Part shown: piece by piece, positions 1 to 60,961 of the stretch
How positions within the stretch are numbered: position 1 is the stretch's first letter
Layout: each line of letters begins with the position of its first letter
IMG/VR virus record: IMGVR_UViG_3300032245_001860
Location: 62,001 to 126,000 of that record
Strand: one strand, 5' to 3'
Length of the DNA stretch: 64,000 bases
Notes under the pieces: model-generated
Seen by the model: only the letters and a program-made list of their open reading frames with translations
Databases searched by the model: none
Told to the model about the DNA's origin: nothing
Program-made: the position numbers and the translations under genes

Positions 1-626
1 AAAACATTTCTCCAAGCAGATGAAATAACTATAGTAGGATTTACTTCTTCAACTATTTGATTTAATAGTTTGATTTTATCTTTTTGAATATATTTTGAAA
101 GTTTGCCTTGATCAAAATCTTCTGGATGTTTCATTATATGTAAATGCGGATCTGTATTTAAAACTCCATCACAATCCAAGAATAACATTTTTGTTTGAGA
201 TGCATAAAGTTTAGAAACAGCTTCTAAAATATGTTTTTTGCCATCCCATAAAATTTCAGGAAGATCATTTACATCAAACCATTTTAAAGCTTCACAATCA
301 CTATCAGCTACTGGCTCTTTGTCATCTTTGTATTTGTAAGCATAAATATCGCAAAATCTTCCGTCTGATTCTGATTTGAACGATTTTTCAATTGTGTGTA
401 GTTTTTTCTTTTTAAGCTTAAGATGAGTTTCTTCTTTGATTTCTCTGACAGCTGCTGATTCTGATGACTCTCCTGATTCTATTTTTCCACCAGGTATTGC
501 ATATTTTGTTGAAGTTTTTTGCTCTAATAAAACTTCAACTTTGTCATCTTCTTTTCTAAATACAATAACACAAGCTACTGATTTGCTGTCACTCATTGTT
601 CCACTTTGAGCTATTTTGTACCACAT
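1..626 (-). CDS. MWYK-tagged NUDIX hydrolase fused to a HAD (HAD_SAK_2-like) domain; runs off the window edge and is absent from the ORF track
   Basis: Manual translation from ATG at 626: MWYKIAQSGTMSDSKSVACVIVF...IPGGKIESGESSESAAVREIKEETHL (Nudix box GX5EX7REUXEE), then MLFLDCDGVLN...IVISSAWR (HAD DxDGV motif I and SSxWR). Confidence 0.85.
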   Translation of the reverse strand, partial: MWYKIAQSGTMSDSKSVACVIVFRKEDDKVEVLLEQKTSTKYAIPGGKIESGESSESAAVREIKEETHLKLKKKKLHTIEKSFKSESDGRFCDIYAYKYKDDKEPVADSDCEALKWFDVNDLPEILWDGKKHILEAVSKLYASQTKMLFLDCDGVLNTDPHLHIMKHPEDFDQGKLSKYIQKDKIKLLNQIVEEVNPTIVISSAWRNV

Positions 627-635
627 GCTAATTTT

Positions 636-661
636 ATTCTGCCTTACTTGCTTTTTTTCTT
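636..661 (-). promoter_or_regulatory. candidate SigH-like late promoter AAGA-N17-AGAAT
   Basis: Same spacing as the AGGA-N17-AGAAW motif upstream of other tagged genes; 9 nt before the ATG at 626. Confidence 0.45.
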
Positions 662-696
662 GTTATTGTGTATTATCTAATTTGAGGTGATATAAA

Positions 697-1305
697 ATGT
701 TTGTACCAGAAAGCAGATCCTGGAAAGAATTGTTTGTTTATGAAAGCAATTTGATAGATCCACAACCAGGCTATATAGGAAACTCTCCTGGTTGTCCGAT
801 GTTTGAAAATCACATGAATGCTATTAATTTTTGCCTAAGTAATGGCTGGGAGTTAAATGAAAATACTCCACTTGACATACATAGATTTTTAACTCGTGGC
901 ATACCTTTTTTTGAAGATCATAATTCATCAGGTAAATATAGAACAGTGGATGTTTGGATTGGCCATGATTTATGTCCTAATCCTATTTTAATTCCTAATC
1001 TTATGAATCAATGGTTTAAGATTACCAATAAAATGATGAATAGTTTTATTAACAAATGTGGCAATGAATCAGAAGCTCGTAAAATAGCTTGGATTTCGCA
1101 TCATATTTTTGAAACCATACATCCTTTTATAGATGGGAATGGAAGAACTGGTAGGCTTTTATTGGCCAAAATTTTACATGATTTAGGTCATGATCCAATT
1201 GTTGTAAGATTTGATGATAGATTTGAATATTATGATGCTATTCAAAGTTTTAGAGATCAATATTGGACTGGCAAGCAATTCATAATTACTGACTTCGAAA
1301 TGTAA
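697..1305 (+). CDS. Fic/Doc family protein (AMPylase-like)
   Basis: Intact Fic motif HPFIDGNGRTGR; GAGGTG RBS upstream. Confidence 0.9.
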   Translation: MFVPESRSWKELFVYESNLIDPQPGYIGNSPGCPMFENHMNAINFCLSNGWELNENTPLDIHRFLTRGIPFFEDHNSSGKYRTVDVWIGHDLCPNPILIPNLMNQWFKITNKMMNSFINKCGNESEARKIAWISHHIFETIHPFIDGNGRTGRLLLAKILHDLGHDPIVVRFDDRFEYYDAIQSFRDQYWTGKQFIITDFEM

Positions 1306-2410: not shown

Positions 2411-3661
2411 TTAAAACATCTGAATGAATTTATTTATTATAGTAGTTTGATCATTAATTGGAACATTGTCTGCTTGCAATTTGTGTTTCAATTCACTTAA
2501 TGATTTATTATAGTTTTTAGTTCTTGTGTAAAGTGAATATCCATAACCCAAATACATCTTGATATCTGTAGGTTTATTTATTGTTTGTACTGGCGCTTTA
2601 CTTGACATTTGATCTGAAGTTTGTTTAGATAAATTTGTTGGCTTAGACTTTGGCTTCAATAATGATTTTTGTAACTCTTTCTTAAGTGCTCCAACAAATT
2701 GCATAAACTGCATATATTTAAATTGATTTTCAGAACTTGTAGGATTTCTCAACCAGACATATTTTTTAGTAAGGTTAGGATTATTCAATATTTCTCTATT
2801 TGAGATAAATTTATTTTGTTGCATGATTGGCTGCAAATCATTTATGGCTTTTTTTACATCGGGATCTGCAGATGCTAATAACTGATCTATATTTGCTGAT
2901 AATGAATAGTCATTCTCAGCAATTTGTGTCTTGAAATCATCTTTTTCACCAGTATATCTCAGATAAGAATCAATGCCTTGTCTCCCAAGAGAAGACAAAC
3001 TTGCTGTTGCATATAATGCACCACCAATGCCTTTAGTGATAGGAAGAGGAATAGAAACTAAAACAGCTGCAATTGCAAGTAAACAAACTTCTATAAACTT
3101 AGCTCTTTCTTCTGCATCATTCCAAATTTGATTAAACTTACCAGCAGATATCAAGTCTATATATTTTGCAATATCTTTTCTTGACTGATAGAGATTAATT
3201 ACAATTCCCAGCAAAGGTAAGAATTTTACAAATCTTGCAAGTCCTGGAATTTTTGTAGCAATTTTTGCTAAGAATCCCTCAGCTTCTGCAGCTTTGGGAC
3301 TTTTTTTAGCAATATCAGCAAAAGTCTTTAATTTTGAAAGATGTTCACGAGCATCTGCTGCACTTCCAGCTGCATCCAATACATCAAATCCTGCGAATGC
3401 TCCTGCTTCTATAGCACCTTTTGCTCCTGATGATAGATTACTTTTTTGCAGATAATTAAAAGGCATTTTGATAGCATTGCCAATTGCTGTTTCTGCAATA
3501 TCATCATTCTGAATCCATTTTTGATTACTTAGTCCCAAACCATTATTTGCTGCAAATCTTTTGTTGACTAATTTCTCATAGAAATCAGCTTGTTCATAAA
3601 ATCCGTAGGAATCACACAATTCCGCATAGGATATACAATTTTGGGCAGAAAGTCTAATCAT
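2411..3661 (-). CDS. hypothetical protein with tag-like N-terminus and hydrophobic helices; putative virion/ejection protein
   Basis: 416 aa; AELCDSYGFYEQADFYEKLVNKRFAA resembles the tag of 8264-9616; hydrophobic segments FLPLLGIVINL and CLLAIAAVLVSIPL. Confidence 0.6.
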   Translation of the reverse strand: MIRLSAQNCISYAELCDSYGFYEQADFYEKLVNKRFAANNGLGLSNQKWIQNDDIAETAIGNAIKMPFNYLQKSNLSSGAKGAIEAGAFAGFDVLDAAGSAADAREHLSKLKTFADIAKKSPKAAEAEGFLAKIATKIPGLARFVKFLPLLGIVINLYQSRKDIAKYIDLISAGKFNQIWNDAEERAKFIEVCLLAIAAVLVSIPLPITKGIGGALYATASLSSLGRQGIDSYLRYTGEKDDFKTQIAENDYSLSANIDQLLASADPDVKKAINDLQPIMQQNKFISNREILNNPNLTKKYVWLRNPTSSENQFKYMQFMQFVGALKKELQKSLLKPKSKPTNLSKQTSDQMSSKAPVQTINKPTDIKMYLGYGYSLYTRTKNYNKSLSELKHKLQADNVPINDQTTIINKFIQMF

Positions 3662-3704: not shown

Positions 3705-4166
3705 ATGACACAAAGAGATGCATACGAGTTGTTTTTTCCTTTGATAGAAAATTCAGGAAAAACATTTCACAAATCTTCATTAGTTTATGCAGAATTGGCT
3801 AAGGGTGGAGAGTTTATTGAAACTTGGACTAATGATGGACTGGAAACAACTAATTATGCAAACGCTGGAGATTTTATTGTCCAAAATCTACAAACAGAAA
3901 ATCTCGAAAAATATGTTGTGCCACCTGATATGTTTAAGTCAAGGTATAAGTTTTTTTACTGGCACGATAATGGAGCTATCTGTATACCTTTAGGGAAAGT
4001 TAGAGCTATACAATATATTGGTGAAGATACACAGTTCATTGCTAAATGGGGCAGATTGATGATTTTAAAGACTGGTGATTTTATTGTATCTCCAGCGCCA
4101 GATTTTCAAGAAGTATATAGAATAGCAAGAAAAGAATTTTTTGAAACTTATGAGGAAGATTTGTAA
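3705..4166 (+). CDS. hypothetical protein, PGDYG-like, with two internal repeats
   Basis: Repeats NAGDFIV...EKYVVPPDMFKSRY and KTGDFIV...EVYRIARKEFFETY; ATG at 3705 preferred to TTG at 3687. Confidence 0.6.
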   Translation: MTQRDAYELFFPLIENSGKTFHKSSLVYAELAKGGEFIETWTNDGLETTNYANAGDFIVQNLQTENLEKYVVPPDMFKSRYKFFYWHDNGAICIPLGKVRAIQYIGEDTQFIAKWGRLMILKTGDFIVSPAPDFQEVYRIARKEFFETYEEDL

Positions 4167-5254
4167 TGTGGTACAAAACAGCTAAATATGGCTATATTGA
4201 TGTCCAAAAATATTTTGAAGAACAATTAGGATATGAATTAAATTTCAAAATTGAAGATTATTTAGAATATATAATAAAAAAATCTTCCAAAATTGTTCAT
4301 GGTATGATGCGCATTGATTTTGATAAATTGAATAATGAACTTCAAAATTCTCCTCTTAATTTCTTAATCAAAAGATTCGGATCTATGGAAGAATTGACTG
4401 AAGGTAATAGAGAAGGTATTGGTGCTTGGATACCATCTATGAAATATTTACTTCTAATACCTCAATTTCCAGCACAAGTTTTATTTAAAATTGTTGATGT
4501 AGCTATGCACGAACTTGCACATGCTCTGGATAAAAGAGCAGGAAAATACCCAGATGATAAATATTTTCTTATACATTTCAAAGCATTAGCTCCAATTATC
4601 ACACAGTATATGACACAGTTTTATAATGATAAAAAACAATTACTTTCAAGAGAACAAGTTTGGGATATTTTTCTAAATCTTATTGTGAAAGATATGAATA
4701 TTCCAGACGACAACAAACCTTTAAGAGAATTCCAAAGGACATTTACTGAATCTCTATGGTCGCAGAAAAAAGATGAGATATTGGATCATATTTTTGCTAT
4801 CGTAAGTAATAATCTAACTGACGATGATTCAATGGAAGAATTTTTACTCAGAGAATATTATAACTTGCCTGTAGAAGCACCAGCACAATTAAACTCATTG
4901 TATAGAGAATCATTGCCTCAGAGATTATTAGAATCTGCATTTCTTGCATATATCTCACATATATATTCTCCAAACCTAATACAAAAACTCAATCTTGATC
5001 CTAATGAAAGAAACCCTGAAGTAATTTTCAAAAAATTACAAGAAATGATTCCTGGTTTTGTGAATGCTGAAATGAAAGAAGATTTTATCAACTACATAAG
5101 GATAGAAATTTTTGATGATGTTGATAATTCTAATATATTAATTGATGGAAAAAATTTCTTGAAATCAATTAGAAAGAAACACATAAGAAGACAAGCTTAT
5201 AAAATCTTAAATGAAAATTTTGCAGAGTTTAAAAAATTAGTAGAAGCTTTGTAA
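4166..5254 (+). CDS. MWYK-tagged zincin-like metallopeptidase domain protein
   Basis: N-terminus MWYKTAK; HELAHALD (HExxH) plus downstream YYNLPVEAPA with a candidate third-ligand Glu. Confidence 0.65.
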   Translation: MWYKTAKYGYIDVQKYFEEQLGYELNFKIEDYLEYIIKKSSKIVHGMMRIDFDKLNNELQNSPLNFLIKRFGSMEELTEGNREGIGAWIPSMKYLLLIPQFPAQVLFKIVDVAMHELAHALDKRAGKYPDDKYFLIHFKALAPIITQYMTQFYNDKKQLLSREQVWDIFLNLIVKDMNIPDDNKPLREFQRTFTESLWSQKKDEILDHIFAIVSNNLTDDDSMEEFLLREYYNLPVEAPAQLNSLYRESLPQRLLESAFLAYISHIYSPNLIQKLNLDPNERNPEVIFKKLQEMIPGFVNAEMKEDFINYIRIEIFDDVDNSNILIDGKNFLKSIRKKHIRRQAYKILNENFAEFKKLVEAL

Positions 5255-8263: not shown

Positions 8264-9616
8264 TTATTCGTTGATAGCTCTTACGAATGCAAGCTCTAAT
8301 CTTGTAAGTTTATTATCATATATAGCTGCAGTAGATTGTTTCATGTTTGGTCTCAATCTATTGAATGTTTCAGATATTAATCTGAAATCAGTATTGAAGG
8401 AGTTCTTGAATAAATTTTTATCTGGCAAAGTTGCTTTTCTTTCTAAGTCTGAAATTAATAAATCTAATTCTGCTACATTGCCAGTTCTTTCACTCGGAAA
8501 CTCACTTAATGGAGCGTCAGTAGTAGTTGCAGTTGATGGCTGAGAAGTAGGCCCAGAAGTTGTTTCAGCTGCAGGTGGGTTAGTTGCAGTCTGGATAGCC
8601 ATATTTCTTGCATCTTCTATTTTTTTATCCAAAAGTTTTTTAAGCTTTTGTTTCTTTGCTGCAGAATATCTTGTCGCATCAATTGCAGCTTTAAATTCTG
8701 CTATTCTTGAAGGATCATCACCTATAAATTTATATCCAGCAAGATTTTGTTCAGGGCGTAAACTTTTATGAACATCAGAATCTGTAACAGTTGAATCCAT
8801 GCTCTTGAGTTTAGTAAAAACAATTTTTGCTAAGGCTTCATTGATAGGAGTACCAGGCATGACAGATCTTGTTGGAGGAGTACGTGCTGGAGTAGAGCTT
8901 GCAGAACCTCCTGGATATGTACCTGCTGAACCAATTGCAGCAGCAGCAGCAGCAGCAGGAGAAGCTGGAGAAGGAAGCGCAGGTGCTCCACCTCTGGGTC
9001 TTCTTGCTGTAATAGCAACAGGTGTATTAGCTATACCACCAGGTGTAAAATTAGGATTAGCTTTTTTTGTGATTTCAACTTCAGCTTCTCTCAAATAATA
9101 AATATAATTATAATATTTTGTATTGCCTACATATATTTGAGCTTGAGATTGAGACCAGTCCAAGAAGTTTCCTTGGGCATCAACATTAGAAGCCCGTGCA
9201 AGAGCTGTCATTATTGCTGGTGTTGTACCTGTAGGCGGAGTATATGCAGTGCTCCCTCTGCCAAGCATTCTTTTTGCTACAACTAAAAGCTCTTTTTTAG
9301 CTTCTTTTAATTTATTAGCAAACCCAGTAAAACCAACACCTGCAGCATAAGCGAGATATGAGTTTAAAGCCTTGAAACTTTCATCAATATATTCTTCACG
9401 ATCTTTGAATTTTGTGAGAGATATCATTGATCTATCGAGTGTTCTTCGGAATGAATTTCCAAATCCACCACCAGGTTCTTGCCCTTGCAAAGAAACATCT
9501 CTTTGAGGTTCATCTGCAGCAGTTTTCACCATATTTTTTTCAGTGACATCTGCTGCAGAATATGCTCCAATAGAGTCAAGATGCTTAGCTAATTTAATAT
9601 ACTCGTCAGTATTCAT
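8264..9616 (-). CDS. hypothetical Ala/Pro/Thr-rich protein with N-terminal KLA/KTA tag; putative virion protein
   Basis: MNTDEYIKLAKHLDSIGAYSAADVTEKNMVKTAA; low-complexity linkers. Confidence 0.65.
   Translation of the reverse strand: MNTDEYIKLAKHLDSIGAYSAADVTEKNMVKTAADEPQRDVSLQGQEPGGGFGNSFRRTLDRSMISLTKFKDREEYIDESFKALNSYLAYAAGVGFTGFANKLKEAKKELLVVAKRMLGRGSTAYTPPTGTTPAIMTALARASNVDAQGNFLDWSQSQAQIYVGNTKYYNYIYYLREAEVEITKKANPNFTPGGIANTPVAITARRPRGGAPALPSPASPAAAAAAAIGSAGTYPGGSASSTPARTPPTRSVMPGTPINEALAKIVFTKLKSMDSTVTDSDVHKSLRPEQNLAGYKFIGDDPSRIAEFKAAIDATRYSAAKKQKLKKLLDKKIEDARNMAIQTATNPPAAETTSGPTSQPSTATTTDAPLSEFPSERTGNVAELDLLISDLERKATLPDKNLFKNSFNTDFRLISETFNRLRPNMKQSTAAIYDNKLTRLELAFVRAINE
8937..8957. 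repeat. (GCA)7 microsatellite encoding poly-Ala
   Basis: gcagcagcagcagcagcagca inside the 8264-9616 CDS. Confidence 0.8.
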
Positions 9617-33572: not shown

Positions 33573-34793
33573 ATGGCAAAAGAAGTAAAAAATAGTATTC
33601 AAGATATTGTGGATAAAGACCAAGAGCGTCTGTTAAAGCAAAAACTTAAAGCATTAGGTATTGATGAAAAATGTATCAAACCTGGTGATGTTGATAATGT
33701 GGAATTTATTCCTACAGGTGTATTTGAAGTAGATTCAATTCTTGGTGCTGGAATGGGAATTCCGACAGGTACGCTAATTGAATTTTGTGGAGAATCTCAA
33801 TCAGGTAAGACTTGGTTAGGTTATAAACTAATTGCAGAAGCACAAAAGCAAGGCAAGAAATGTGCTTTCTTTAACATTGAGAACTCATATTATCCCCAGA
33901 GAGCAATTTCATGTGGTGTCAATGTATCTCAACTTTTATTAGTAGAAAATGTTGGTTCTGCTGAAAAGTATGGTGAGTTGCTCAAGTACATGGTTGAAAC
34001 AGGCGATTATGCGATAATTGTAGTTGATTCTATTTCAGCTATGATTCCAAATGATGAATTAGAAAAATCACTTGAGCAAGTTCAAACAATTGGCCTTCAT
34101 GCACGATTTGTCAAGCGTTTGACTAAAGACTTGACTGCAAAAACAGCTGCTACTGGAACAATAGTTGTTCTCATTAACCAGCTTTATATGGGTGCTGGTG
34201 TGATGCCTGGAACTATGACTAAAACAGCTTCAGGTGGTAATGCAATGAACTACTTCACCCATATGCGCCTATGGATTAATAAGATTAATGGTGCTGCTGG
34301 GCAAGTAACCAAAAAAGACGCAGAAGGCAAAGATGTGGTTATTGGTGGCAAAAGCAAAGTTCTTGTTATGAAGACTCGCTATGGCCAACCTAATGTTACT
34401 GGTGAATTCAAAATTATGTTCACTGATGATGAAACCACCAATCCTGTTGATGAATTTCTTTACAAGGCTAAGGCAAAGGGTTTCGAATATATTAAGGAAA
34501 TCCGTAAGAAATTTATTTACACGAATATTGACACTGGTGAAGTTGTTGAGTCAAAGGATGCATATGAATTTTGCAAACTATTAATGGCTCAACCAGCTCC
34601 TGAAAAGCGTACCCGTGGAGATATGTCAACCACTGCTTTTGAATATATCTGTGGACGATTAAAGGTTCTTGGCAAACCTCTTACTGATCTTTTAGAAGCA
34701 ATTAGTAAGGGTCCAGCAACGGACGAACTTGATGATGATGACGATGACGATGGTGGTATTTCTTTTGAAGAAGCTGCTAAAATAATGTTATAG
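33573..34793 (+). CDS. recA: RecA/UvsX recombinase
   Basis: GESQSGKT, IVVDSISAM, INQL, SGGNAMNY. Confidence 0.92.
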   Translation: MAKEVKNSIQDIVDKDQERLLKQKLKALGIDEKCIKPGDVDNVEFIPTGVFEVDSILGAGMGIPTGTLIEFCGESQSGKTWLGYKLIAEAQKQGKKCAFFNIENSYYPQRAISCGVNVSQLLLVENVGSAEKYGELLKYMVETGDYAIIVVDSISAMIPNDELEKSLEQVQTIGLHARFVKRLTKDLTAKTAATGTIVVLINQLYMGAGVMPGTMTKTASGGNAMNYFTHMRLWINKINGAAGQVTKKDAEGKDVVIGGKSKVLVMKTRYGQPNVTGEFKIMFTDDETTNPVDEFLYKAKAKGFEYIKEIRKKFIYTNIDTGEVVESKDAYEFCKLLMAQPAPEKRTRGDMSTTAFEYICGRLKVLGKPLTDLLEAISKGPATDELDDDDDDDGGISFEEAAKIML

Positions 34794-34821
34794 AATAAAG
34801 GTCTCGCAAGAGACCTTTATT
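34794..34821 (+). terminator. intrinsic terminator
   Basis: aataaaggtctc-gcaa-gagacctttatt. Confidence 0.8.
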
Positions 34822-34827
34822 GTTTTA

Positions 34828-34836
34828 TGATAAAAT
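34828..34836 (+). promoter_or_regulatory. extended -10 promoter of a leaderless transcript
   Basis: TGaTAAAAT 6 nt before ATG 34843. Confidence 0.55.
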
Positions 34837-34842
34837 AAGATC

Positions 34843-35598
34843 ATGGAAAATAAAGAAATATCTTTCCAACAATTCATAAGAAATCTCAATGAAAATACTC
34901 ATGCTCAAAAGTATTTTAAGTCAAGAGGTTTATCAAAGAATATTGTCAAAGAAGGATTGGTAGGTTTTTGTCCTACTTACTCAAGATATTCTTTTCCTTT
35001 ATTGAGAGGAAGGTTGATAGTTCCCATAAGAGATGTATATGGGAAAACTATTGCTCTCGCTGGCAGACAAATACCAGATATTAAGGATGACTTAATAACT
35101 TCTTTTTGGGAATCTTTTGGAAGCGAACCATCAAAATGTCAAGATCGTATTTCGAAATGGTCAAAAGGCAAATGGATTAATGAACCTTATGTTAAGGCTA
35201 AAAATTTGTTTTTTCTTGATCAGTCTAAAAAATATGTACGAGAGAAAAATTACATTATCTTAGTTGAAGGATATTTTGATGTTTATTCACTTTATGACAA
35301 TGGGATTAAGAATGTTGCAGCTATATGCGGAACATCTATTTCTGAATATCAAATTGCATTAGCTTCAAGGTTTTGCGATAATATTGTTACTCTTATGGAT
35401 TCAGATTTTGCTGGAAAAACTGCAGCTAACAAAATTGTTTCCAAGGTAGAAGATTTAGGTTTAAAAGCTTTTAAGGTTTATTTACCTGTTGGAATGGATC
35501 CAGATGATTTTGCTAAGAATTATGACACTTCATTTTTAAATGAATCTATTAGCAACATGATAGCAGATTCAAAAAAAGAACTATATATTGGGATTTAA
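34843..35598 (+). CDS. dnaG: DNA primase catalytic (TOPRIM) domain lacking the zinc finger
   Basis: YFKSRGL, RLIVPIRD..G..IALAGR, KWIN, VEGYFDV, MDSDFAG, DPDDF. Confidence 0.88.
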   Translation: MENKEISFQQFIRNLNENTHAQKYFKSRGLSKNIVKEGLVGFCPTYSRYSFPLLRGRLIVPIRDVYGKTIALAGRQIPDIKDDLITSFWESFGSEPSKCQDRISKWSKGKWINEPYVKAKNLFFLDQSKKYVREKNYIILVEGYFDVYSLYDNGIKNVAAICGTSISEYQIALASRFCDNIVTLMDSDFAGKTAANKIVSKVEDLGLKAFKVYLPVGMDPDDFAKNYDTSFLNESISNMIADSKKELYIGI

Positions 35599-35599
35599 T

Positions 35600-37393
35600 A
35601 TGGAAGAAATAAGCACTGTTTGGCAAATGAAACCTTGTGATACTCAAATCATGAGAGAAATAGCTTACGAGTTGGAACTACCTTTGTCTGTTGCTCAAGT
35701 TATGGTAACAAGAGGTATTGATTCTATAAGCAAAGCACAAAAATTCTTCAAGTTAGATATCAACAAACTTCATAATCCTTTTTTACTTCCAGATGCCCAA
35801 AAAGCAGTAGATAGATTAAATAAAGCTATAGACGATCAAGAGAAGATTTTTGTATGGGGTGACTATGATGTTGACGGTATTACATCAACAGCTATAGTTG
35901 TTACAGCGCTCAAGAAAATGGGTGCTAATTTTGAATTTAAAGTTCCTCATAGAATGGAAGATGGATATGACATCAAAGTTCATTCTGTTGATGAAGCAAT
36001 CTCAAGAGAAGCAAAGCTTTTGATGTCTGTAGACTGCGGTATCGTTGCTTTTGAAACTGCTGAGTATGCAAAGAAGTGTGGCTTAGACTTGATAATCACT
36101 GATCACCACCACCCTTCTGATGATGGAAGAATTCCTGACTGTATTGCTGTAGTAAATCCTAATAGGGACGATCCTTACTATCCTGGTGAACATTTCAAAG
36201 AGCATTTGCAGGAAGGCTTTAAGAGATATCCATTTGATCATCTTGCTGGCTGTGGCATTGCAATGAAGCTGATGTTAGGACTTGCCAAAAGTAGGAAGCT
36301 TAATGTCATGGATTTTGTAAATGACTTAGTCGAATTTGCAGCACTTGGAACTGTTGCTGACGTTGCTCCTATGTATGACGAAAACAGAATAATTGTTTCA
36401 TATGGTTGTCAAATTTTATCAAGAAGTGTAAAGCCTGGAGTTGCTGAGTTACTTAGAATTGCAAATGTCAAAGAAGTGACAACTACTTCTATCGGCTTTC
36501 AAATTGGCCCAAGAATTAATGCCATAGGAAGACTTGCAGATTCTGGCACTGCATTAGCTTTACTGTTAGCTGAAAATGACATCATTGCTGCAAATTTAGC
36601 GCAAAAATTAGAAAGTGCAAACAGAAAAAGACAAGAGCAACAAGAAAAAGCTATTGCCGAAGCTATTGAGTTTGTAGAAAAAACCGTTGACCTCGAAAAT
36701 GAACATATTGTTGTGTTAGGTCAAGAAGATTGGCATCCAGGTTTGATAGGTTTGATAGCTGGAAAAATTGCAGAAATGTATCATAAGCCTACATTGATTT
36801 GTTCTTTCAAAAATGATGGATATGCTAAAGGTTCTTGTAGGTCTGTAAGAGATTTCAACATTCTTGATGCTTTAAAATCTGAAGAAGCATGGGCCTTATT
36901 TAAGAAAAGAGCGGATGGTTCTACTGTTTGTGGTGGACATGCCTTTGCTGCTGGATTTGAATTAGCAATAGAAAACATTCCAGCAATGAGAAAAGCTTTG
37001 AACAAATATGCTCAAGATAAAATGGGAGAGCCTGTCAAAGAAAAGGTTATTGATATTGATGCAAAATTGCCTTTTTATGAGTTGAACATGAAAACATATA
37101 TCAACCTCATGAAACTTTCTCCATTTGGTTCAGGAAACAATAATCCAATATTTGTTACAAGAGGACTAAAGGTTGTAGAAGCTAAACCACTCTCAAAAGG
37201 CAAACATCTCAAGTTAAGGCTATCAGACGGAGATAAAACTTGGGTTCCTGCTAATGCTTGGAGAAAGGGCCATCTTGGTGAAAAAATTAAAGCTGGTTCT
37301 ACAGTTGATGTTGCATATACTCTTGATTTGGACTCTTGGTCTGGAAATAATAATTTAGTTATGATTATTGAAGATATTACTAATATCAAGTAG
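35600..37393 (+). CDS. recJ: ssDNA-specific exonuclease RecJ
   Basis: GDYDVDG, VDCG, TDHH, LGTVADV, PRINAIGRL, GSCRS, GGHAFAAG, PFGSGN. Confidence 0.95.
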   Translation: MEEISTVWQMKPCDTQIMREIAYELELPLSVAQVMVTRGIDSISKAQKFFKLDINKLHNPFLLPDAQKAVDRLNKAIDDQEKIFVWGDYDVDGITSTAIVVTALKKMGANFEFKVPHRMEDGYDIKVHSVDEAISREAKLLMSVDCGIVAFETAEYAKKCGLDLIITDHHHPSDDGRIPDCIAVVNPNRDDPYYPGEHFKEHLQEGFKRYPFDHLAGCGIAMKLMLGLAKSRKLNVMDFVNDLVEFAALGTVADVAPMYDENRIIVSYGCQILSRSVKPGVAELLRIANVKEVTTTSIGFQIGPRINAIGRLADSGTALALLLAENDIIAANLAQKLESANRKRQEQQEKAIAEAIEFVEKTVDLENEHIVVLGQEDWHPGLIGLIAGKIAEMYHKPTLICSFKNDGYAKGSCRSVRDFNILDALKSEEAWALFKKRADGSTVCGGHAFAAGFELAIENIPAMRKALNKYAQDKMGEPVKEKVIDIDAKLPFYELNMKTYINLMKLSPFGSGNNNPIFVTRGLKVVEAKPLSKGKHLKLRLSDGDKTWVPANAWRKGHLGEKIKAGSTVDVAYTLDLDSWSGNNNLVMIIEDITNIK

Positions 37394-37447
37394 TTTACAT
37401 ATTTTTAAATTTTACACATAATACTTACATCCTCTGGAGTAAGCATT

Positions 37448-38416
37448 GTGAATAATGATTTAAAGATTGCTAACAGTAAAGTACAAGAAAGTTTAGAAGC
37501 TGCAATATTAAGGTATCAAAAAAGCTTATTATCGAATAATAAGAATTTAATTGATAAGTATTACAAAGAGATTTGTAAACTTTATCCACCATATCTACAC
37601 ATGCAAGAATGGTGGAATCAATATCATTATTTATATGATTCACAAGAAGACTTTGCTTCAGATTACATTAAGATATTTTGCAATGTTTTATCAAATTGGA
37701 AACCCAGATCCACACGTAAAAAATCAAGATATGGTGGGTCTGGAGAATTCAAAAACTATTTTATTGGCGCATTGCAGCATAACTATATTAATTTAGTTAA
37801 GGCTGATAATGCTGGTAAAAGAAATCCATCTCAAAAATGTCCAATATGTGAAAAATGGGTAAATCCTTTGTCCACCCATGTTTTACATCATCATACAAAT
37901 TTATTATGGGACTATCTAAAATTGCAAGGATACATTTTAGAAGTATTAGAAAAATGCCCATTCTGTAAATCTCACAAAATGCCCAGAACTTTTACTTGTG
38001 ATGAAAAATGTGAAAATCAAGTTGAAAATGGTTGCGAAAAATGCATAATAGATAAGAGGACATTAGCTATCAAGAAACATCTTTTATCAAAACATTCATC
38101 AATGCTTTTTCAAAGATTTAATGAATTGTATCCAAATCATCAAACAGTATCGCCAAGAGCTTTGAGTGTATATTTGTCAGAAGAAGATGATTCCGATGAA
38201 AATTGCTATTATGACCAAATAAAGGACGAAAGTAAAATTGACAGCTTTCTTGAAGTTGAAATGTCTGATTTGGAAAATAGAATAATTCAAAATGCACTCA
38301 ATGGATCTTCAAGTGTAAAATTTGACGCAAAGCTTTATAATTGCTCAATGGAAGAGTTCAATGGAGCTCTTGAAAGCATAAAGAATAAGATGTCCCTTTT
38401 TGGGTTGGAAGGATAA
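37448..38416 (+). CDS. sigma-70 region-2-like protein with inserted zinc fingers
   Basis: EDFASDYIKIFCNVLSNWKP...FKNYFIGALQHNYINLVK resembles region 2; CPIC...HVLHHH and CPFC...HLLSKH fingers. Confidence 0.5.
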   Translation: MNNDLKIANSKVQESLEAAILRYQKSLLSNNKNLIDKYYKEICKLYPPYLHMQEWWNQYHYLYDSQEDFASDYIKIFCNVLSNWKPRSTRKKSRYGGSGEFKNYFIGALQHNYINLVKADNAGKRNPSQKCPICEKWVNPLSTHVLHHHTNLLWDYLKLQGYILEVLEKCPFCKSHKMPRTFTCDEKCENQVENGCEKCIIDKRTLAIKKHLLSKHSSMLFQRFNELYPNHQTVSPRALSVYLSEEDDSDENCYYDQIKDESKIDSFLEVEMSDLENRIIQNALNGSSSVKFDAKLYNCSMEEFNGALESIKNKMSLFGLEG

Positions 38417-38418
38417 TT

Positions 38419-38805
38419 ATGATCGAAAATTTAGACGAACCAAGTATTGTTGCTGAAAAAGAACCTAAAGCAAGAGTCAAGAATGACCCAAGAATTCTTA
38501 AAGCCAGAGGAGGAGATCCAAATGACCCTGATGAAAACAGAAGGCCTACAGATCCAGTTGGCCTTTCAAGAAGTATTTTACATGTCCTAAAGGATCATGA
38601 ATATGTAAGAGTTTTGTCAGTTGGACCAACCGCTTTAGCCTCAGTTATGTCAGCTTTCAGGTTGGCTTCAAGAGAAATTGAATCACTTACAAATGGCTCT
38701 GTTTTAGTATGCAGACAGTCAGAATACAGTGCAGAAATTGGTGGTAAGAAGGCAAAGGGAGTTTCAACTCGTATCTTTGCTATTGATATTAAATACGCTT
38801 TGTAA
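38419..38805 (+). CDS. SpoVS-like (Alba-fold) nucleic-acid-binding protein
   Basis: TDPVGLSRSILHVLKDHEYVRVLSVGPTALASVMSAFRLA...LVCRQSEYSAEIGGKK aligns by eye with SpoVS (PNSVAGALAGVLRERGAAEIQAIGAGALNQAVKAVAIA...LICIPAFTDIQIDGEE). Confidence 0.7.
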   Translation: MIENLDEPSIVAEKEPKARVKNDPRILKARGGDPNDPDENRRPTDPVGLSRSILHVLKDHEYVRVLSVGPTALASVMSAFRLASREIESLTNGSVLVCRQSEYSAEIGGKKAKGVSTRIFAIDIKYAL

Positions 38806-38809
38806 AACT

Positions 38810-39256
38810 ATGGAAAAGAATGCTTGGATCAGTAAGAAAAAGGAACTACTTTCTAAAATTTTTGTTTCTAAAACTGCTGAAAAAAAGTTAGATTGGGGGT
38901 TTTTATCTCAGGAAACCCCTAATGAAAAACAGAATAAGTATAGTGTCAAAATTGATAGCTGGACAGACTTAATGTACGCAAGTTCAGATATCAATCCTAC
39001 AGTTGAACCTACTTCATTTAACATACATCCTTGTGGTTTTATAGTGAATGATGAATTAGGTCAAGCAGTATTGAATAAGGCGTTTGATAAAGCTGTATTT
39101 TATATAAATCAGCAAACTGATACAGATGAAGATATAGTCAAGGACGCAATTCATGATTATATTTCTAATAACAAATTAAGCACCAAAGGTTTTTATTATT
39201 TGATTAAGAAACTCAAGAATTTGCAACTCGAAGACTTGCCAGACTTACAAGCATAA
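38810..39256 (+). CDS. hypothetical protein
   Basis: ATG 38810: MEKNAWISKKKELLSKIFVSKTAE. Confidence 0.6.
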   Translation: MEKNAWISKKKELLSKIFVSKTAEKKLDWGFLSQETPNEKQNKYSVKIDSWTDLMYASSDINPTVEPTSFNIHPCGFIVNDELGQAVLNKAFDKAVFYINQQTDTDEDIVKDAIHDYISNNKLSTKGFYYLIKKLKNLQLEDLPDLQA

Positions 39257-39328
39257 CGCATAATAACAAAGGAAAGGATAAAAAATATCTGATAGATTTC
39301 TTTCAGGTATTTTTTATTGTCAAAAAAT

Positions 39329-40285
39329 ATGGAAAAGATACTCGAAGAGAATAAGAATAGGTTTGTTTTGTTCCCGCTACAGCACCACGATATATGGGAT
39401 TATTATAAGAAAGCACAGCAAGTTTTCTGGACAGCTGAGGAAATTGACCTACAACAAGATCTCACTGACTGGGAAAAATTGAATGAGGGTGAGAAGCATT
39501 TTGTCAAGCATGTTTTGGCATTCTTCGCTGCTTCTGATGGAATTGTAAATGAGAACTTAGCAGAAAACTTTGTTGCTGAAGTACAGTACACAGAAGCTAA
39601 ATTCTTCTATGGTTTTCAGATCATGATGGAGAATATTCACTCCGAGACATATTCCCTTCTTATTGACACATATATCAAAGACAAAGAAGAGCAAAATCAT
39701 CTCTTCAACGCTATTGATACAGTTCCAGCAGTCCAAAAGAAAGCAGAATGGGCACTTAAGTGGATTGGTTCTGAATCATTTGTTGAAAGATTAATTGCCT
39801 TTGCTGCTGTTGAGGGAATTTTCTTCTCTGGTTCTTTCTGTAGTATTTTCTGGCTCAAGAAGCGTGGTTTGATGCCAGGTCTCTCCTTCTCGAATGAATT
39901 AATTTCCCGTGATGAGGGTCTTCATACAGACTTTGCTGTTCATCTATACAACAATCATATTGAAAATAAATTATCAAGAGAAAGATTGATTGAGATTATT
40001 GATTCAGCACTTGTAATTGAAAAAGAGTTTATTACCGAAGCTCTTCCTGTATCTTTGATCGGCATGAATTCTAATTTAATGAAGCAATATCTTGAATATG
40101 TTTCTGATAGACTTTTGATGGATCTTGGCGTTGGCAAGGTGTATAATGCCGAGAACCCATTTGACTTTATGCAGAATATTGCTATGGCTAATAAAACCAA
40201 TTTCTTTGAAAAGAGAGTAGCTGATTATGTCAAGAGTGGTGTTGGTGAAGTGAAAGAACAAATCTCATTTGACGAGGATTTTTAA
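39329..40285 (+). CDS. nrdB: ribonucleotide reductase class Ia beta subunit
   Basis: [50 protein letters not shown]. Confidence 0.97.
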
Positions 40286-40287
40286 GT

Positions 40288-42720: not shown

Positions 42721-42748
42721 AAAAAGAGGGGAGAAATCCCCTCTTTTT
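42721..42748. terminator. bidirectional intrinsic terminator
   Basis: aaaaagagggga-gaaa-tcccctcttttt. Confidence 0.85.
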
Positions 42749-43217
42749 ACGTATTTGATAAACCTTTTCTAATCTCTCTTAATTTATTGGCTACAGCATC
42801 TTGAGTTGCATTTTCTAAAGTACCATTCATATCAAGTGGATCAACTTCAAAATGAAAATCTCTACCATTAATATGATTTCTCGCAATAGCTGTAATTTGT
42901 TCAGGTGTAGGAGGAGAATGTATATCAACGCTCCATTCTCCATAATTAGAAACTCTTATAGCTCCAGTCAAAGACATAAATGGAACAACATAATCAGAAT
43001 ATCTACTTCCTTGAGATTCTTCTGGTTCATCCATAACAGATTCAATATTTCTATGATCTAATGATCTTTCATATCCACCCTCAGAATAATCAAGAAATTT
43101 ACCAGAGCTTAAGACATATCCAGCTTTGACTGGATCATTTGTTTCACCATAAAACTCTAAAGCTTCTTTTTCTTTGGGATGAATGCCAAAATATGATTGA
43201 GCTAATTTGTACCACAT
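42747..43217 (-). CDS. MWYK-tagged hypothetical protein
   Basis: MWYKLAQ; AGYVLSSGKFLD...DHR...GAIRV...PTPEQ. Confidence 0.7.
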   Translation of the reverse strand: MWYKLAQSYFGIHPKEKEALEFYGETNDPVKAGYVLSSGKFLDYSEGGYERSLDHRNIESVMDEPEESQGSRYSDYVVPFMSLTGAIRVSNYGEWSVDIHSPPTPEQITAIARNHINGRDFHFEVDPLDMNGTLENATQDAVANKLREIRKGLSNT

Positions 43218-43224
43218 ACTTTAC

Positions 43225-43251
43225 ATTTCTAAAAAGATGCAATATAATCCT
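43225..43251 (-). promoter_or_regulatory. candidate SigH-like late promoter AGGA-N17-AGAAAT
   Basis: Exact motif 7 nt before ATG 43217; overlaps the TATAAT of the divergent gene. Confidence 0.6.
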
Positions 43252-43254
43252 TAC

Positions 43255-43575
43255 ATGGGAAAGCCAATTGTACGTGAAGTAAAAATTCTTGATGCAGTTC
43301 TTAAGGAAGACGAAGGAACTGAAGATGAGCCAAAAGTTGTTCAATATATTTGGCTACAGTTACAAGATACAAAAACAGATAGAGTATATACATCTCAATT
43401 GTCACTTGATGATATCAAAGACATAACTGGTATGGATAGATATTTAGAAGGCAGAGAGCTAATTAATTTTACCATTGCACTGAAAGCAAGAGAGACACCT
43501 TTGTCTTTAGTTTTCAATCCTGATGCAGAAGAAATTACAGCTGATATGATAAAGAATGAAGAGGAAATAAATTAA
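43255..43575 (+). CDS. hypothetical protein
   Basis: TATAAT (43243-43248) 6 nt before ATG 43255 (MGKPIVREV). Confidence 0.65.
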   Translation: MGKPIVREVKILDAVLKEDEGTEDEPKVVQYIWLQLQDTKTDRVYTSQLSLDDIKDITGMDRYLEGRELINFTIALKARETPLSLVFNPDAEEITADMIKNEEEIN

Positions 43576-44075
43576 TGGATATTGTAGCTAAGGTTGAAAT
43601 TAAGGCTTTTCGTGAAGGTGCAGTGATTCCTAAGAAGGCCACTCAAGGTGCTGCAGGATATGACTTGTGTGCTTGTATTCCTGATTATTCAAGTGGAATG
43701 ATGATTCATCCAGGCAATTCTTTGATTGTTCCAACGGGCTTGAATGTAAATATTCCAGAAGGTTACGAAATTCAAATTCGTCCAAGATCAGGTTTAGCTG
43801 CAAAGCATGGCGTTACAGTTCTAAACACACCAGGGACAATTGATTGCGATTATACTGGCGATGGTGAAGATTTTGAGTTGAAAGTTATTCTTTTCAATCA
43901 TAACAGAATGCCTTTTAGTATTAATCATGGAGATAGAATTGCTCAAATGGTTGTTGCTAAGTTAGCAGCACATGAACTTGTTGAAGTTGAAGAGTTCAAC
44001 AAGCAAGTAAAGTCTTCTCGCAAGGGCGGATTGGGAAGTACTGGCAAAGGAGCAATAGCTATCAATGGATCATAA
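43575..44075 (+). CDS. dut: trimeric dUTPase
   Basis: AAGYDL, RPRSGLA, GTIDCDYTG, GDRIAQ, RKGGLGSTG. Confidence 0.95.
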   Translation: MDIVAKVEIKAFREGAVIPKKATQGAAGYDLCACIPDYSSGMMIHPGNSLIVPTGLNVNIPEGYEIQIRPRSGLAAKHGVTVLNTPGTIDCDYTGDGEDFELKVILFNHNRMPFSINHGDRIAQMVVAKLAAHELVEVEEFNKQVKSSRKGGLGSTGKGAIAINGS

Positions 44076-48890: not shown

Positions 48891-48928
48891 AATTGTTCAA
48901 ATAAAGCTTCTTGCCTTCGGTAATATAA

Positions 48929-60945: not shown

Positions 60946-60961
60946 TCTGTAAAATAATCAT

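What the first reader, a model, noticed from the sequence alone, without database searches (positions are those of the whole stretch)
1..626. MWYK-tagged NUDIX plus HAD fusion missed by the ORF track
Seen: tag, intact Nudix box, then an FLDCDGVLN/SSAWR HAD domain of the type associated with RNA-repair proteins. Inference: if packaged, this pyrophosphatase-phosphatase pair could act immediately on injection, for example on alarmones, immune nucleotides, ADP-ribose or RNA ends.
Basis: partly seen in the sequence, partly recalled or inferred. Interest (0 to 1): 0.6.

Follow-up and report, generated by a model that had tools for sequence, protein, structure and literature searches.

The report
Tagged Nudix-HAD enzyme of a jumbo phage
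An uncultured freshwater giant phage encodes a fused pyrophosphatase-phosphatase that starts with a seven-residue N-terminal label (MWYKIAQ), and about ten unrelated proteins per genome in this phage group carry the same label, so it looks like an undescribed protein-sorting signal.

Summary
Window 626-1 (minus strand) is the first 208 codons of a 300-codon gene that runs 276 nt past the window edge, in a 316-kb virus record. Pfam gives NUDIX (residues 18-135, E 1e-16) and HAD_SAK_2 (148-290, E 1e-24). The Nudix catalytic residues and all four HAD motifs are present.

New here:
- The two domains are a conserved pair. In close relatives they are separate, overlapping adjacent genes. An unrelated protein has them fused in the reverse order. 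In Vibrio phage nt-1 a HAD_SAK_2 gene sits next to an NMNAT-Nudix gene.
- MWY[KR]xA[QK] is a real protein-level tag. Ten ORFs in this genome start with it (0.017 expected), as do 6-13 in related jumbo-phage records, but Bacillus phage G has none above chance. When Nudix and HAD are split, each half carries its own tag.
- Other tagged proteins include cell-wall hydrolases, PcfJ-like proteins, a kinase and a small protein encoded directly upstream of the portal gene.

Most likely the protein is a two-step nucleotide-derivative hydrolase carrying an address label. Capsid loading and co-injection is the most plausible destination but is not shown. The RNA-repair reading rests mainly on the Pfam family's name plus an unspecific fold match; no Rnl2 or RtcB ligase was found in the record.

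The parts
1..626 (-). In-window part (codons 1-208) of the 300-codon Nudix-HAD gene. The remaining 92 codons and the stop lie left of the window (G000 61724-62000; L001 1224-1500).
   Evidence: ORF listing with open ends; window placed in the genome; full ORF.
606..626 (-). N-terminal tag MWYKIAQ (residues 1-7).
   Evidence: Read directly from the sequence. M1, W2, Y3 and A6 are invariant in 12 fused homologs down to 42% identity. The same tag starts 10 ORFs in this genome.
579..605 (-). Variable linker (residues 8-16) between the tag and the Nudix fold. It contains Met11, a possible internal start.
   Evidence: AF2 gives pLDDT below 50 for residues 1-13. The linker varies in length and sequence among homologs.
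222..575 (-). Nudix hydrolase domain (residues 18-135).
   Evidence: Pfam PF00293, 61.4 bits, E 1.2e-16. It is the only Nudix match in the record.
420..488 (-). Nudix box, G47-x5-E53-x7-R61-E62-I-x-E65-E66-x-H68-L69.
   Evidence: G47, E53, R61, E62, E65 and E66 are invariant in the 19-sequence clade alignment.
1..185 (-). In-window part (residues 148-208) of the HAD_SAK_2 phosphatase domain, which spans residues 148-290 in all.
   Evidence: Pfam PF18143, 87.9 bits, E 1e-24. The AF2 model of the domain has pLDDT 92.7.
162..176 (-). HAD motif I, D151-C-D153-G-V (nucleophile and acid/base aspartates).
   Evidence: Read directly from the sequence. Both Asp are invariant in 107 family members.
9..23 (-). 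HAD motif II region, S202-S203-A-W205-R206.
   Evidence: Ser, Trp and Arg are invariant or nearly so in the family alignment.
627..696 (.). 70-bp divergent intergenic region between the Nudix-HAD gene and the Fic gene.
   Evidence: The divergent Fic / Nudix-HAD arrangement is kept in relatives down to 42% identity.
697..1305 (+). Fic-domain gene (202 aa, untagged, motif HPFIDGNGRTGR), a conserved divergent neighbour.
   Evidence: Pfam PF02661, 55.6 bits; synteny.
4166..5254 (+). Another MWYK-tagged gene in the window (362 aa, no family match).
   Evidence: The tagged ortholog is kept in L049-L052.
42747..43217 (-). Another MWYK-tagged gene in the window (156 aa, no family match). This family is tagged in several related jumbo-phage contigs.
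   Evidence: Tagged homologs occur in L078, L088, L094 and L096.

Best explanation
The gene encodes one polypeptide with three parts: a 7-residue N-terminal label (MWYKIAQ) on a flexible linker, a MutT/ADPRase-like Nudix pyrophosphohydrolase, and a capless HAD-superfamily phosphomonoesterase (HAD_SAK_2).

- **Shown:** both domains have complete catalytic motifs, and the two domains form a recurrent, conserved pair.
- **Inferred mechanism:** the Nudix domain cuts the pyrophosphate bond of a nucleoside-diphosphate-X compound. An ADP-ribose/NAD-derived molecule or a (d)NTP are the best candidates. The HAD domain then removes the exposed terminal phosphate from one product, so the compound cannot easily be rebuilt.
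- **The label:** it is not part of either enzyme. It is a protein-level address tag carried once per polypeptide by about 10 unrelated proteins of this phage group.
- **Destination (inferred, not shown):** its most plausible role is to load these proteins into the capsid, like the T4 capsid-targeting sequence, so that they enter the cell with the DNA.
For: - **Domains and motifs:**
- **The pairing recurs in four ways.**
  - Fused Nudix-HAD forms only 2 clusters among 1.84 billion representative proteins, corresponding to 11 clusters at 90% identity.
  - In relatives L063-L066 the same locus (Fic, then divergently Nudix, HAD and a small ORF) holds the domains as separate genes, overlapping by 11-14 nt in L063-L065 and abutting in L066.
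  - P0064 has HAD_SAK_2 followed by Nudix, the reverse order, in an unrelated sequence.
  - In Vibrio phage nt-1 a standalone HAD_SAK_2 gene lies directly upstream of a CTP_transf_like+NUDIX gene.
- **Type of Nudix.**
  - A profile of the clade hits NrtR/ADPRase/NadM-Nudix structures (2fml, 5bs6, 4kyx, 2qjt) and NUDT1/MutT-like structures (2yyh, 6dby) about equally well.
  - The clade is repeatedly fused to thymidylate kinase.
- **The tag is real.**
  - This genome has 10 tagged ORFs against 0.017 expected.
  - Related records have 8, 6, 13 and 10 pattern matches against 0-1 in the reversed-pattern control; phage G has 2 against 2.
- **The tag is selected at the protein level.** Codons vary: Tyr TAC/TAT, Lys AAA/AAG, Arg AGA/CGA, Ala all four GCN. 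Shine-Dalgarno strength does not differ between tagged and other genes.
- **One tag per polypeptide.** Split Nudix and split HAD each carry it, and the fusion carries it once.
- **The tag is exposed.** pLDDT is below 50 for residues 1-13.
- **Hints of a virion link.**
  - A tagged 171-aa gene abuts the portal gene, which is followed by a gene with a head-protease-like domain.
  - A tagged NlpC/P60 hydrolase exists, while untagged GH108 muramidase domains are also present.
  - P0034 is tag + M23 peptidase + this Nudix.
  - The Nudix domain matches PHROGs annotated 'portal protein' (E 2e-9) and 'head maturation protease'.
  - The tagged PcfJ-like protein weakly matches YerA41_160, annotated 'structural protein'. 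That phage's particle proteins were identified by LC-MS/MS, but this gene's detection was not checked.
Against: - No substrate is identified. The Nudix lacks the downstream signatures of ADPRases, Ap4A hydrolases or NADH pyrophosphatases: the first Pro after the box is 36 residues away (sequence; the signatures are from my knowledge of Dunn et al. 1999). It scores far below every NCBIfam equivalog cut-off.
- The HAD fold matches are generic and nearly tied: Z 10.4 to 8.7 for MDP-1, GmhB, Lem4, T4 Pnkp and Scp1.
- The inter-domain geometry of the model is uncertain (pTM 0.55).
- Packaging has no direct evidence. The phage is uncultured and no RNA or proteome data exist.
- No conserved protease site follows the tag.
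- The tag also sits on thymidylate-kinase fusions and a small kinase, which fit a cytoplasmic role at least as well.
- The YerA41 match is weak (E 2e-5 over 26% of the query). That virion proteome lists 63 proteins, including polymerases, so it may contain contaminants.
Confidence: 0.5

Rival explanations
1. RNA-end healing enzyme. The Nudix domain removes 5' triphosphates or nucleotide caps from RNA (like RppH or NudC). The HAD domain removes 3' phosphates (like the T4 Pnkp phosphatase). Together they prepare or disarm RNA ends during infection.
For: - The HAD belongs to PF18143, defined in RNA-repair contexts. Published computational analyses assign this family to terminal-phosphate removal in phage RNA repair.
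- The T4 Pnkp phosphatase and Pnkp1 are among the top fold matches (Z 9.1 and 8.6).
- There are weak NCBIfam hits to RNA pyrophosphohydrolase models.
- A tagged AAA_33 (PNK-like) kinase exists in a related phage.
Against: - No Rnl2-type ligase or RtcB is found in the 316-kb record. The Rnl1 search was uninformative because its control was silent.
- RppH and YtkD models score 24-32 bits against cut-offs of 116-154.
- Pnkp is not closer in fold than protein or sugar phosphatases.
- No member of the HAD_SAK_2 family turned up as experimentally characterised: there is no sequence match in the PDB and all viral fold matches are unnamed.
Confidence: 0.17
2. Cytoplasmic nucleotide-pool enzyme made after infection. 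Here the tag is not a packaging signal. It would be a docking peptide for a multi-enzyme complex, a localisation signal or a stability signal. The enzyme would degrade an unwanted (d)NTP to the nucleoside, as dNTPase plus nucleotidase pairs do in phages that exclude a canonical base.
For: - MutT/NUDT1-like hits.
- The same tagged Nudix clade is fused to thymidylate kinase, including in giant proteins.
- The tag occurs on a small P-loop kinase.
- One tagged gene lies next to a putative ribonucleotide reductase gene, recognised from its sequence only and not scanned.
- The dTTPase plus dTMPase precedent in Bacillus phages with hydroxymethyluracil or uracil DNA comes from my own knowledge and was not checked here.
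Against: - This record has no thymidylate synthase-like gene and no thymidylate kinase, so there is no sign of a base-replacement pathway.
- Tagged wall hydrolases and the portal-adjacent tagged gene do not fit a nucleotide-metabolism complex.
- The HAD is capless, unlike the capped 5'-nucleotidases; SDT1 scores only Z 8.0.
Confidence: 0.2
3. The HAD domain is a protein phosphatase working with the neighbouring Fic enzyme on host proteins, and the Nudix domain handles the nucleotide by-product or co-substrate.
For: - The best fold matches include the protein phosphatases MDP-1 (Z 10.4), Lem4 (9.2), Scp1/Fcp1 (9.0/8.7) and UBLCP1 (8.7).
- The divergent Fic neighbour is conserved down to 42% identity.
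- The Fic motif is canonical.
Against: - Z-scores are tied with sugar and nucleic-acid phosphatases.
- The Fic gene is untagged.
- In nt-1 and in P0064 the HAD-Nudix pairing exists with no Fic annotated or detected.
- No known chemistry links Nudix cleavage to AMPylation (my knowledge).
Confidence: 0.08
4. The 'tag' is a nucleotide-level signal (translation initiation or promoter element) or a chance or annotation artefact, not a protein signal.
For: - The DNA word ATGTGGTA is shared by all tagged starts.
- Many tagged genes lack a strong Shine-Dalgarno sequence.
Against: - Synonymous codons vary at Tyr, Lys/Arg (including AGA against CGA) and Ala, while the residues stay.
- Position 6 is Ala in 35 of 43 distinct tags, using all four GCN codons.
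- Shine-Dalgarno strength does not differ from other genes (P 0.63).
- No shared upstream motif is visible.
- The chance expectation is 0.017 per genome.
- Variant tags MIFKQAK and MYFRQSK keep the residue classes but not the bases.
Confidence: 0.04

Closest known systems
HAD_SAK_2 (PF18143) standalone phosphatases of phages, and the T4 Pnkp 3'-phosphatase domain
   Same: The C-terminal domain is a full-length member by HMM (88 bits). It has DxDxV, S, R and DD motifs and a capless Rossmannoid HAD fold. Standalone members are common in Vibrio and Shewanella phages and in giant viruses.
   Different: Published descriptions say the family tends to occur as a standalone domain. Here it is fused behind a Nudix domain and carries, or shares, an N-terminal tag. 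No RNA ligase partner was found. T4 Pnkp is no closer in fold than MDP-1 or GmhB.
Small MutT/NUDT1-type and COG1051 ADP-ribose-pyrophosphatase-type Nudix hydrolases, including the NMNAT-Nudix enzyme of KVP40-like vibriophages (NatV type)
   Same: The Nudix box is complete and the domain has the compact single-domain size. The best profile hits are in these groups. In Vibrio phage nt-1 a HAD_SAK_2 gene is the direct neighbour of the NMNAT-Nudix gene.
   Different: It scores below every curated equivalog cut-off and has no subfamily signature downstream of the box. This clade has its own conserved GSDA...W...LP motif. It is fused to HAD, thymidylate kinase or M23 peptidase, not to NMNAT.
Mycobacterial MutT1 (Nudix domain plus a second phosphatase domain)
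   Same: It is a two-domain enzyme of similar length with a Nudix pyrophosphatase in front. The whole-model Foldseek alignment spans about 270 columns.
   Different: By my knowledge the second domain of MutT1 is a histidine-phosphatase fold, not HAD. The alignment rmsd is 14-15 A, so only the Nudix half superposes. This is an analogue, not a relative.
T4 capsid-targeting sequence (CTS) on internal proteins and Alt
   Same: It is a short N-terminal peptide shared by otherwise unrelated proteins of one phage, several of them enzymes. Some of the genes are scattered and some clustered. T4 Alt being packaged and injected is cited; the CTS itself is from my knowledge.
   Different: The tag shows no resemblance to the T4 CTS as I recall it. 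No conserved cleavage site follows it. Virion location and cleavage are untested, and the host and phage lineage are quite different (portal nearest to Bacillus phage G at 30% identity).
Polyvalent packaged effector proteins of phages (Iyer, Burroughs, Anand, de Souza, Aravind 2017)
   Same: Enzymatic effector domains are joined to wall hydrolases or portal-type proteins and are predicted to be injected. Here P0034 joins an M23 peptidase to this Nudix, and giant proteins P0159 and P0162 contain the Nudix.
   Different: The protein here has only two domains, no MuF or portal module, and uses a short N-terminal tag rather than fusion to a head protein.

Membership tests
NUDIX hydrolase superfamily (PF00293) | Nudix box GX5EX7REUXEEXGU with its catalytic Glu/Arg residues | tested here: met
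   G47, E53, R61, E62, I63, E65, E66 and L69 are present. Only the penultimate Gly is His (Asn in relatives).
NUDIX hydrolase superfamily (PF00293) | HMM score above the curated cut-off, and the alpha/beta/alpha Nudix fold | tested here: met
   61.4 bits against a cut-off of 21.1. The AF2 model matches Nudix structures with Foldseek E down to 1.8e-9.
MutT 8-oxo-dGTPase (TIGR00586 equivalog) | Score above the equivalog cut-off | tested here: not met
   34.7 bits against a cut-off of 97.9.
RNA pyrophosphohydrolase RppH / YtkD | Score above the equivalog cut-off | tested here: not met
   YtkD model: 31.5 bits against 154.4. RppH models: 24 bits or less against 116-259.
ADP-ribose pyrophosphatase subfamily of Nudix | Conserved proline about 15-16 residues after the Nudix box (signature recalled from Dunn et al. 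1999, not checked here) | tested here: not met
   The first Pro after L69 is P105. Even so, ADPRase/NrtR-like structures are among the best profile hits.
HAD superfamily phosphatase | Motif I DxDx(T/V), motif II S/T, motif III K/R and motif IV DD on a Rossmannoid fold | tested here: met
   D151-x-D153-x-V155, S202/S203, R241 and D261-D262 are invariant or nearly so in 107 relatives. The model has pLDDT 92.7, with Z 10.4-8.0 to many HAD structures.
HAD_SAK_2 (PF18143) | HMM score above the cut-off over the full model length | tested here: met
   87.9 bits against 27.5, covering model positions 2-139 of 139.
Phage RNA-repair system (healing plus sealing) | An RNA ligase (Rnl1, Rnl2 or RtcB) and a 5' kinase in the same genome or neighbourhood | tested here: not met
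   Rnl2 (PF09414) and RtcB (PF01139) are absent while their controls ring. The Rnl1 search was inconclusive because its control was silent. The kinase was not searched for in this record. The record is 88% complete, so absence is not proof.
T4-type capsid-targeting sequence | A short N-terminal peptide shared by unrelated proteins of one phage | tested here: met
   10 ORFs in this genome and 43 distinct tagged N-termini across relatives.
T4-type capsid-targeting sequence | Tagged proteins are present in the virion, and the peptide is cleaved by the prohead protease | not testable with these tools
   The phage is uncultured, and only DNA runs hold it. No conserved residue follows position 7 that would mark a cleavage site.

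The most novel reading that the evidence does not exclude
MWY[KR]xA[QK] is a previously undescribed N-terminal sorting signal of a clade of uncultured freshwater jumbo phages. It marks a cargo set of roughly 6-13 enzymes and effectors per genome (Nudix, HAD phosphatase, wall hydrolases, PcfJ-like proteins, kinases) for loading into the capsid and delivery into the host with the DNA. On this reading the Nudix-HAD fusion is an injected first-minute enzyme that destroys a host nucleotide signal or metabolite.
Probability: 0.35. Interest if true: 0.8.

Novelty: new variant of a known kind. Interest (0 to 1): 0.62.

Why it matters
- **A readable cargo list.** If the tag is a sorting signal, the whole set of proteins sent to one destination can be read straight from the sequence of uncultured giant phages. 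In T4 that took decades of genetics. The tag could also serve as a handle for loading foreign proteins into capsids.
- **A first lead on HAD_SAK_2.** The recurrent Nudix + HAD_SAK_2 pairing is the first functional lead found here for a HAD family that is widespread in phages and giant viruses, for which no experimentally characterised member turned up. It predicts a simple testable reaction: pyrophosphate cleavage followed by dephosphorylation.
- **Relevance to phage-host conflict.** Nucleotide-derived immune signals and NAD/ADP-ribose metabolism are central to that conflict, so an enzyme pair delivered or made early to remove such a molecule would be a new kind of counter-defence.
- **If the tag has another role.** A signal for stability or complex assembly would be a smaller result, but the tag would still be a clean lineage marker.

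Tried and rejected
- **Literature search for the peptide.** Full-text search for MWYK/MWYR found nothing relevant.
- **IMG/VR scan with the family alignment.** It returned only distant Nudix relatives and no fused homolog. Those 627 kb served as a negative control for the tag: one chance MWY start.
- **Cultured phages.** None has the fusion; only the HAD half matches. The tagged 156-aa family has no match in cultured phages.
- **HAD domain against PDB sequences.** No hit even at E 10. Foldseek against the PDB gave only weak HAD hits, so the exhaustive aligner was used.
- **Word search with the HAD domain alone.** It found only two proteins. The exhaustive representative search was then used once, because the novelty claim rests on absence of relatives. 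Most '2-stretch' hits in that search were Nudix-Nudix or HAD-HAD tandems, not the fusion.
- **RNA-repair partners.** Rnl2 and RtcB are absent, and Rnl1 was uninformative.
- **Base-replacement partners.** ThyA and Tmk are absent.
- **RNA-level explanations of the tag.** No Shine-Dalgarno difference, and no shared promoter word upstream of tagged genes.
- **NARP3 paper.** It was checked for a Nudix-HAD link, but NARP3 is a PnuC/NadR system and unrelated.
- **Degenerate collection scan.** About 13 of its 30 matches are chance hits, either inside ORFs or at the start of very short ORFs.
- **One scan call failed** on a wrong frame and was repeated without that item.
- **Complex prediction was not used,** because no specific receptor for the tag can be named.
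- **Read laying was not used,** because no RNA run holds the stretch.
Full report
**1. What is at the coordinates**

The window is G000:C1:62001-126000 of a 315,852-bp virus record, 33% G+C, estimated 88% complete. With open ends allowed, the ORF listing shows a minus-strand frame at window 3..626 that starts MWYKIAQ and runs off the window's left edge. This explains why a default ORF track did not list it. In the genome the gene is G000 61724-62626 and encodes 300 residues (P0002). Only codons 1-208 are in the window.

**2. The domains are real**

- Pfam gives NUDIX at residues 18-135 (61.4 bits, cut-off 21.1, E 1.2e-16) and HAD_SAK_2 at 148-290 (87.9 bits, cut-off 27.5, E 1e-24).
- PHROGs gives phrog_1198 (MutT/NUDIX hydrolase) and phrog_1818 (unknown function).
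- The Nudix box is G47-x5-E53-x7-R61-E62-I-x-E65-E66-x-H68-L69. All catalytic residues are present and are invariant in a 19-member clade alignment. Only the penultimate Gly is replaced.
- The HAD motifs are D151-x-D153-x-V, S202/S203, R241 and D261-D262. They are invariant or nearly so in 107 relatives.
- This is the only Nudix match and the only HAD_SAK_2 match above cut-off in the record.
- An AlphaFold2 model of the whole protein has mean pLDDT 82. Residues 1-13 are below 50, and pTM is 0.55, so the relative placement of the domains is uncertain.
- The HAD domain alone, folded with a 107-sequence alignment, has pLDDT 92.7.

**3. The two domains are a conserved pair**

- The word search found 11 clusters with the same two-domain architecture, at 42-93% identity, all from metagenomes.
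- The exhaustive search of 1.84 billion representatives found only two full-length fusion clusters.
- The closest other hits are standalone Nudix proteins (55-58% identity to the N-terminal half) and standalone HAD proteins (48-55% to the C-terminal half).
- Their contigs show the same locus as here: a divergent Fic gene, then Nudix, then HAD, then a small ORF. There the Nudix and HAD are two genes, overlapping by 11-14 nt in L063-L065 and abutting in L066. So this is a gene fusion or fission within one lineage.
- Independently, P0064 has HAD_SAK_2 followed by Nudix, the reverse order, in an unrelated sequence.
- In Vibrio phage nt-1 a standalone HAD_SAK_2 gene lies directly upstream of a cytidylyltransferase-like + NUDIX gene, the NMNAT-Nudix type known from KVP40.
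- No cultured phage has the fusion.
- The Fic / Nudix-HAD / small-ORF synteny holds down to 42% identity.

**4. What the enzymes resemble**

*Nudix.*
- The single sequence hits Arabidopsis NUDX1 and MutT-type structures best.
- A profile of the clade hits NrtR/ADPRase/NadM-Nudix structures (2fml, 5bs6, 4kyx, 2qjt) and NUDT1/MutT-like ones (2yyh, 6dby) about equally.
- Every NCBIfam equivalog is far below its cut-off.
- No subfamily signature follows the box (the signatures are from my own knowledge).
- The clade is repeatedly fused to thymidylate kinase, including in proteins of 1178 and 2171 residues, and once to an M23 peptidase.

*HAD.*
- It has no sequence match in the PDB.
- By exhaustive structural alignment it is a capless HAD with nearly tied matches: MDP-1 Z 10.4, GmhB 9.9, Lem4 9.2, T4 Pnkp 3'-phosphatase 9.1, Scp1 9.0 and Fcp1 8.7.
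- In the viral structure library its relatives are numerous but all uncharacterised.
- The 'RNA repair' label comes from computational work that assigns the family to terminal-phosphate removal and describes it as mostly standalone.

*Partners in this record.* There is no Rnl2 ligase or RtcB. The Rnl1 search was uninformative. There is also no thymidylate synthase or thymidylate kinase.

**5. The tag**

*It is far above chance.*
- All five MWYK tetrapeptides in the six-frame translation are at ORF starts.
- Ten ORFs start MWY[KR], against 0.017 expected (P about 6e-25).

*What the ten tagged proteins are*:
- two PcfJ-like proteins;
- an NlpC/P60 peptidoglycan hydrolase;
- the Nudix-HAD;
- six proteins with no family.

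*The tag is conserved at the protein level.*
- In the Nudix-HAD family, M1, W2, Y3 and A6 are invariant down to 42% identity, while the following linker varies.
- When the gene is split, both the Nudix and the HAD product carry their own tag. The fusion carries one, so there is one tag per polypeptide.
- The tag also heads Nudix-thymidylate-kinase fusions, an M23-peptidase-Nudix fusion whose N-terminal region resembles that of the tagged NlpC/P60 protein here, and an AAA_33 kinase in a related phage.
- From 43 distinct tagged N-termini the consensus is M-W-Y-[K/R]-[L/I/T/F]-A-[Q/K], with nothing conserved after position 7.
- Codons vary synonymously: TAC/TAT, AAA/AAG, AGA/CGA and all four GCN. 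So selection acts on the peptide. Shine-Dalgarno strength is no different.

*The tag is lineage-specific.*
- A DNA-pattern scan of IMG/VR found 30 matches. Seventeen are true N-termini in low-GC contigs, many of them large, and often in tandem arrays of three to five tagged genes.
- Whole-record counts are 8, 6, 13 and 10 in four related records, against 0-1 for the reversed control. Bacillus phage G, the nearest cultured phage by portal (30% identity), has 2 against 2, i.e. chance.
- In 627 kb of unrelated phage loci there is one chance MWY start.
- Full-text search found no description of the peptide.

**6. Where the tag might send proteins**

*For a virion destination.*
- The tagged 171-aa gene (G000 130051-130566) ends 9 nt before the portal gene. 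The portal gene is followed by a 1405-aa gene with a head-maturation-protease-like domain, and the large terminase is 9 kb upstream.
- A tagged wall hydrolase coexists with two GH108 muramidase domains that lack this tag. So the tagged one need not be the lysis enzyme.
- A relative joins a tagged wall peptidase to this Nudix.
- The Nudix domain matches PHROG families annotated as portal protein (E 2e-9) and head maturation protease (E 0.012), so Nudix domains are physically joined to head proteins elsewhere.
- The tagged PcfJ-like protein weakly matches YerA41_160, annotated 'structural protein'. That phage's particle-associated proteins were identified by LC-MS/MS, but I did not check that this gene was among them.
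- The general idea of packaged, injected enzyme effectors is established for T4 Alt and proposed for polyvalent proteins.

*Against a virion destination.*
- Kinase and thymidylate-kinase fusions carry the tag.
- No cleavage motif follows it.
- The YerA41 match is weak.
- There are no expression or proteome data: only DNA runs, from lake and freshwater metagenomes of several studies, hold this stretch.

**7. Conclusion**

- The safest statement is that this is a bifunctional pyrophosphatase-phosphatase whose halves work together on a nucleotide-type compound. It carries a lineage-specific N-terminal address tag.
- My best guess for the chemistry is a cut of a nucleoside-diphosphate-X compound (ADP-ribose/NAD-derived, or a (d)NTP), followed by removal of the exposed phosphate.
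- My best guess for the tag is capsid loading, at roughly 35-40%.
- Rivals are RNA-end healing, a purely cytoplasmic nucleotide-pool role with the tag serving complex assembly or stability, and a protein-phosphatase role with Fic.
- A nucleotide-level origin of the tag is close to excluded.
- The enzyme is a new architecture of known domains. The tag appears undescribed and is the more interesting part.

Noticed in passing
window 2411-3661 (-), 8264-9616 (-), 1331-2407 (-, degenerate); also G000 42976-43938, 60138-61436, 245695-246393, 301321-301854, 301864-302607, and the C-terminus of 229886-230551: A second recurrent terminal motif, roughly [IL]A-x2-LD-x2-G-x-Y-x2-AD, sits at residues 5-30 of at least seven otherwise unrelated proteins. 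One of them contains a GH108 muramidase domain. These genes interleave with MWY-tagged genes at G000 42-72 kb. The 85-aa ORF just downstream of Nudix-HAD ends with a degenerate copy. This could be a second docking or sorting module.
   Followed up: partly
window 697-1305 (+): An untagged Fic-domain gene with the canonical HPFIDGNGRTGR motif is divergently paired with the Nudix(-HAD) gene in every relative examined, down to 42% identity. The functional link is unknown.
   Followed up: partly
window 594-596 (-), codon 11 of the Nudix-HAD gene: A Met lies 4-5 residues after the tag in all 12 fused homologs, although the linker is otherwise variable. It could be an internal start that gives an untagged isoform.
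   Followed up: no
G000-wide, e.g. upstream of G000 57473, 58228, 145836, 146839, 210860, 291435; portal gene 130575: Two upstream words are strongly over-represented. TGTACAA occurs before 15 genes against 1.3 expected. The extended -10 word TGnTATAAT is also enriched. Both often lie only 14-16 nt before the ATG, which suggests very short or absent mRNA leaders and at least two promoter classes.
   Followed up: partly
G000 48217-49116 (+); L049 17800-18699; L054 4701-5669; L063 16488-17456: The phage and its relatives carry a prepilin-type N_methyl + DUF1559 (SBP_bac_10) gene. I recall this family as expanded in Planctomycetota, which hints at the host. The stretch is found in lake and freshwater metagenomes.
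   Followed up: no
L094 1430-4889; L088 4357-5734; L096 10618-13010; L067 1558-4926: In related jumbo-phage contigs the tagged genes form tandem arrays of three to five consecutive ORFs. These include a family with a YVFYHGSR motif, whose nature was not examined.
   Followed up: no
L075 2737-3201 (G002, 333.6-kb record): A 154-aa AAA_33 (PNK-like or nucleotide kinase) protein carries the same tag, MWYKLAQ.
   Followed up: partly
G000 34141-42563 (+) and 57473-58950 (+): There are three tandem paralogs of about 900-1000 aa with similar N-termini, and two adjacent 240-aa paralogs, each preceded by the TGTACAA word.
   Followed up: no
G000 130575-137289 (L061 12575-19286): The portal is nearest to that of Bacillus phage G (29.6% identity over 60% of its length). 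The next gene encodes a 1405-aa protein whose N-terminal part matches a head-maturation-protease PHROG, an unusually large protease-fusion protein.
   Followed up: partly
L053 4046-4447 (relative at 42% identity): A standalone cytidylyltransferase-like (NMNAT-type fold) gene lies two genes from the Fic / Nudix-HAD pair. This echoes the HAD_SAK_2 / NMNAT-Nudix neighbourhood of Vibrio phage nt-1.
   Followed up: partly
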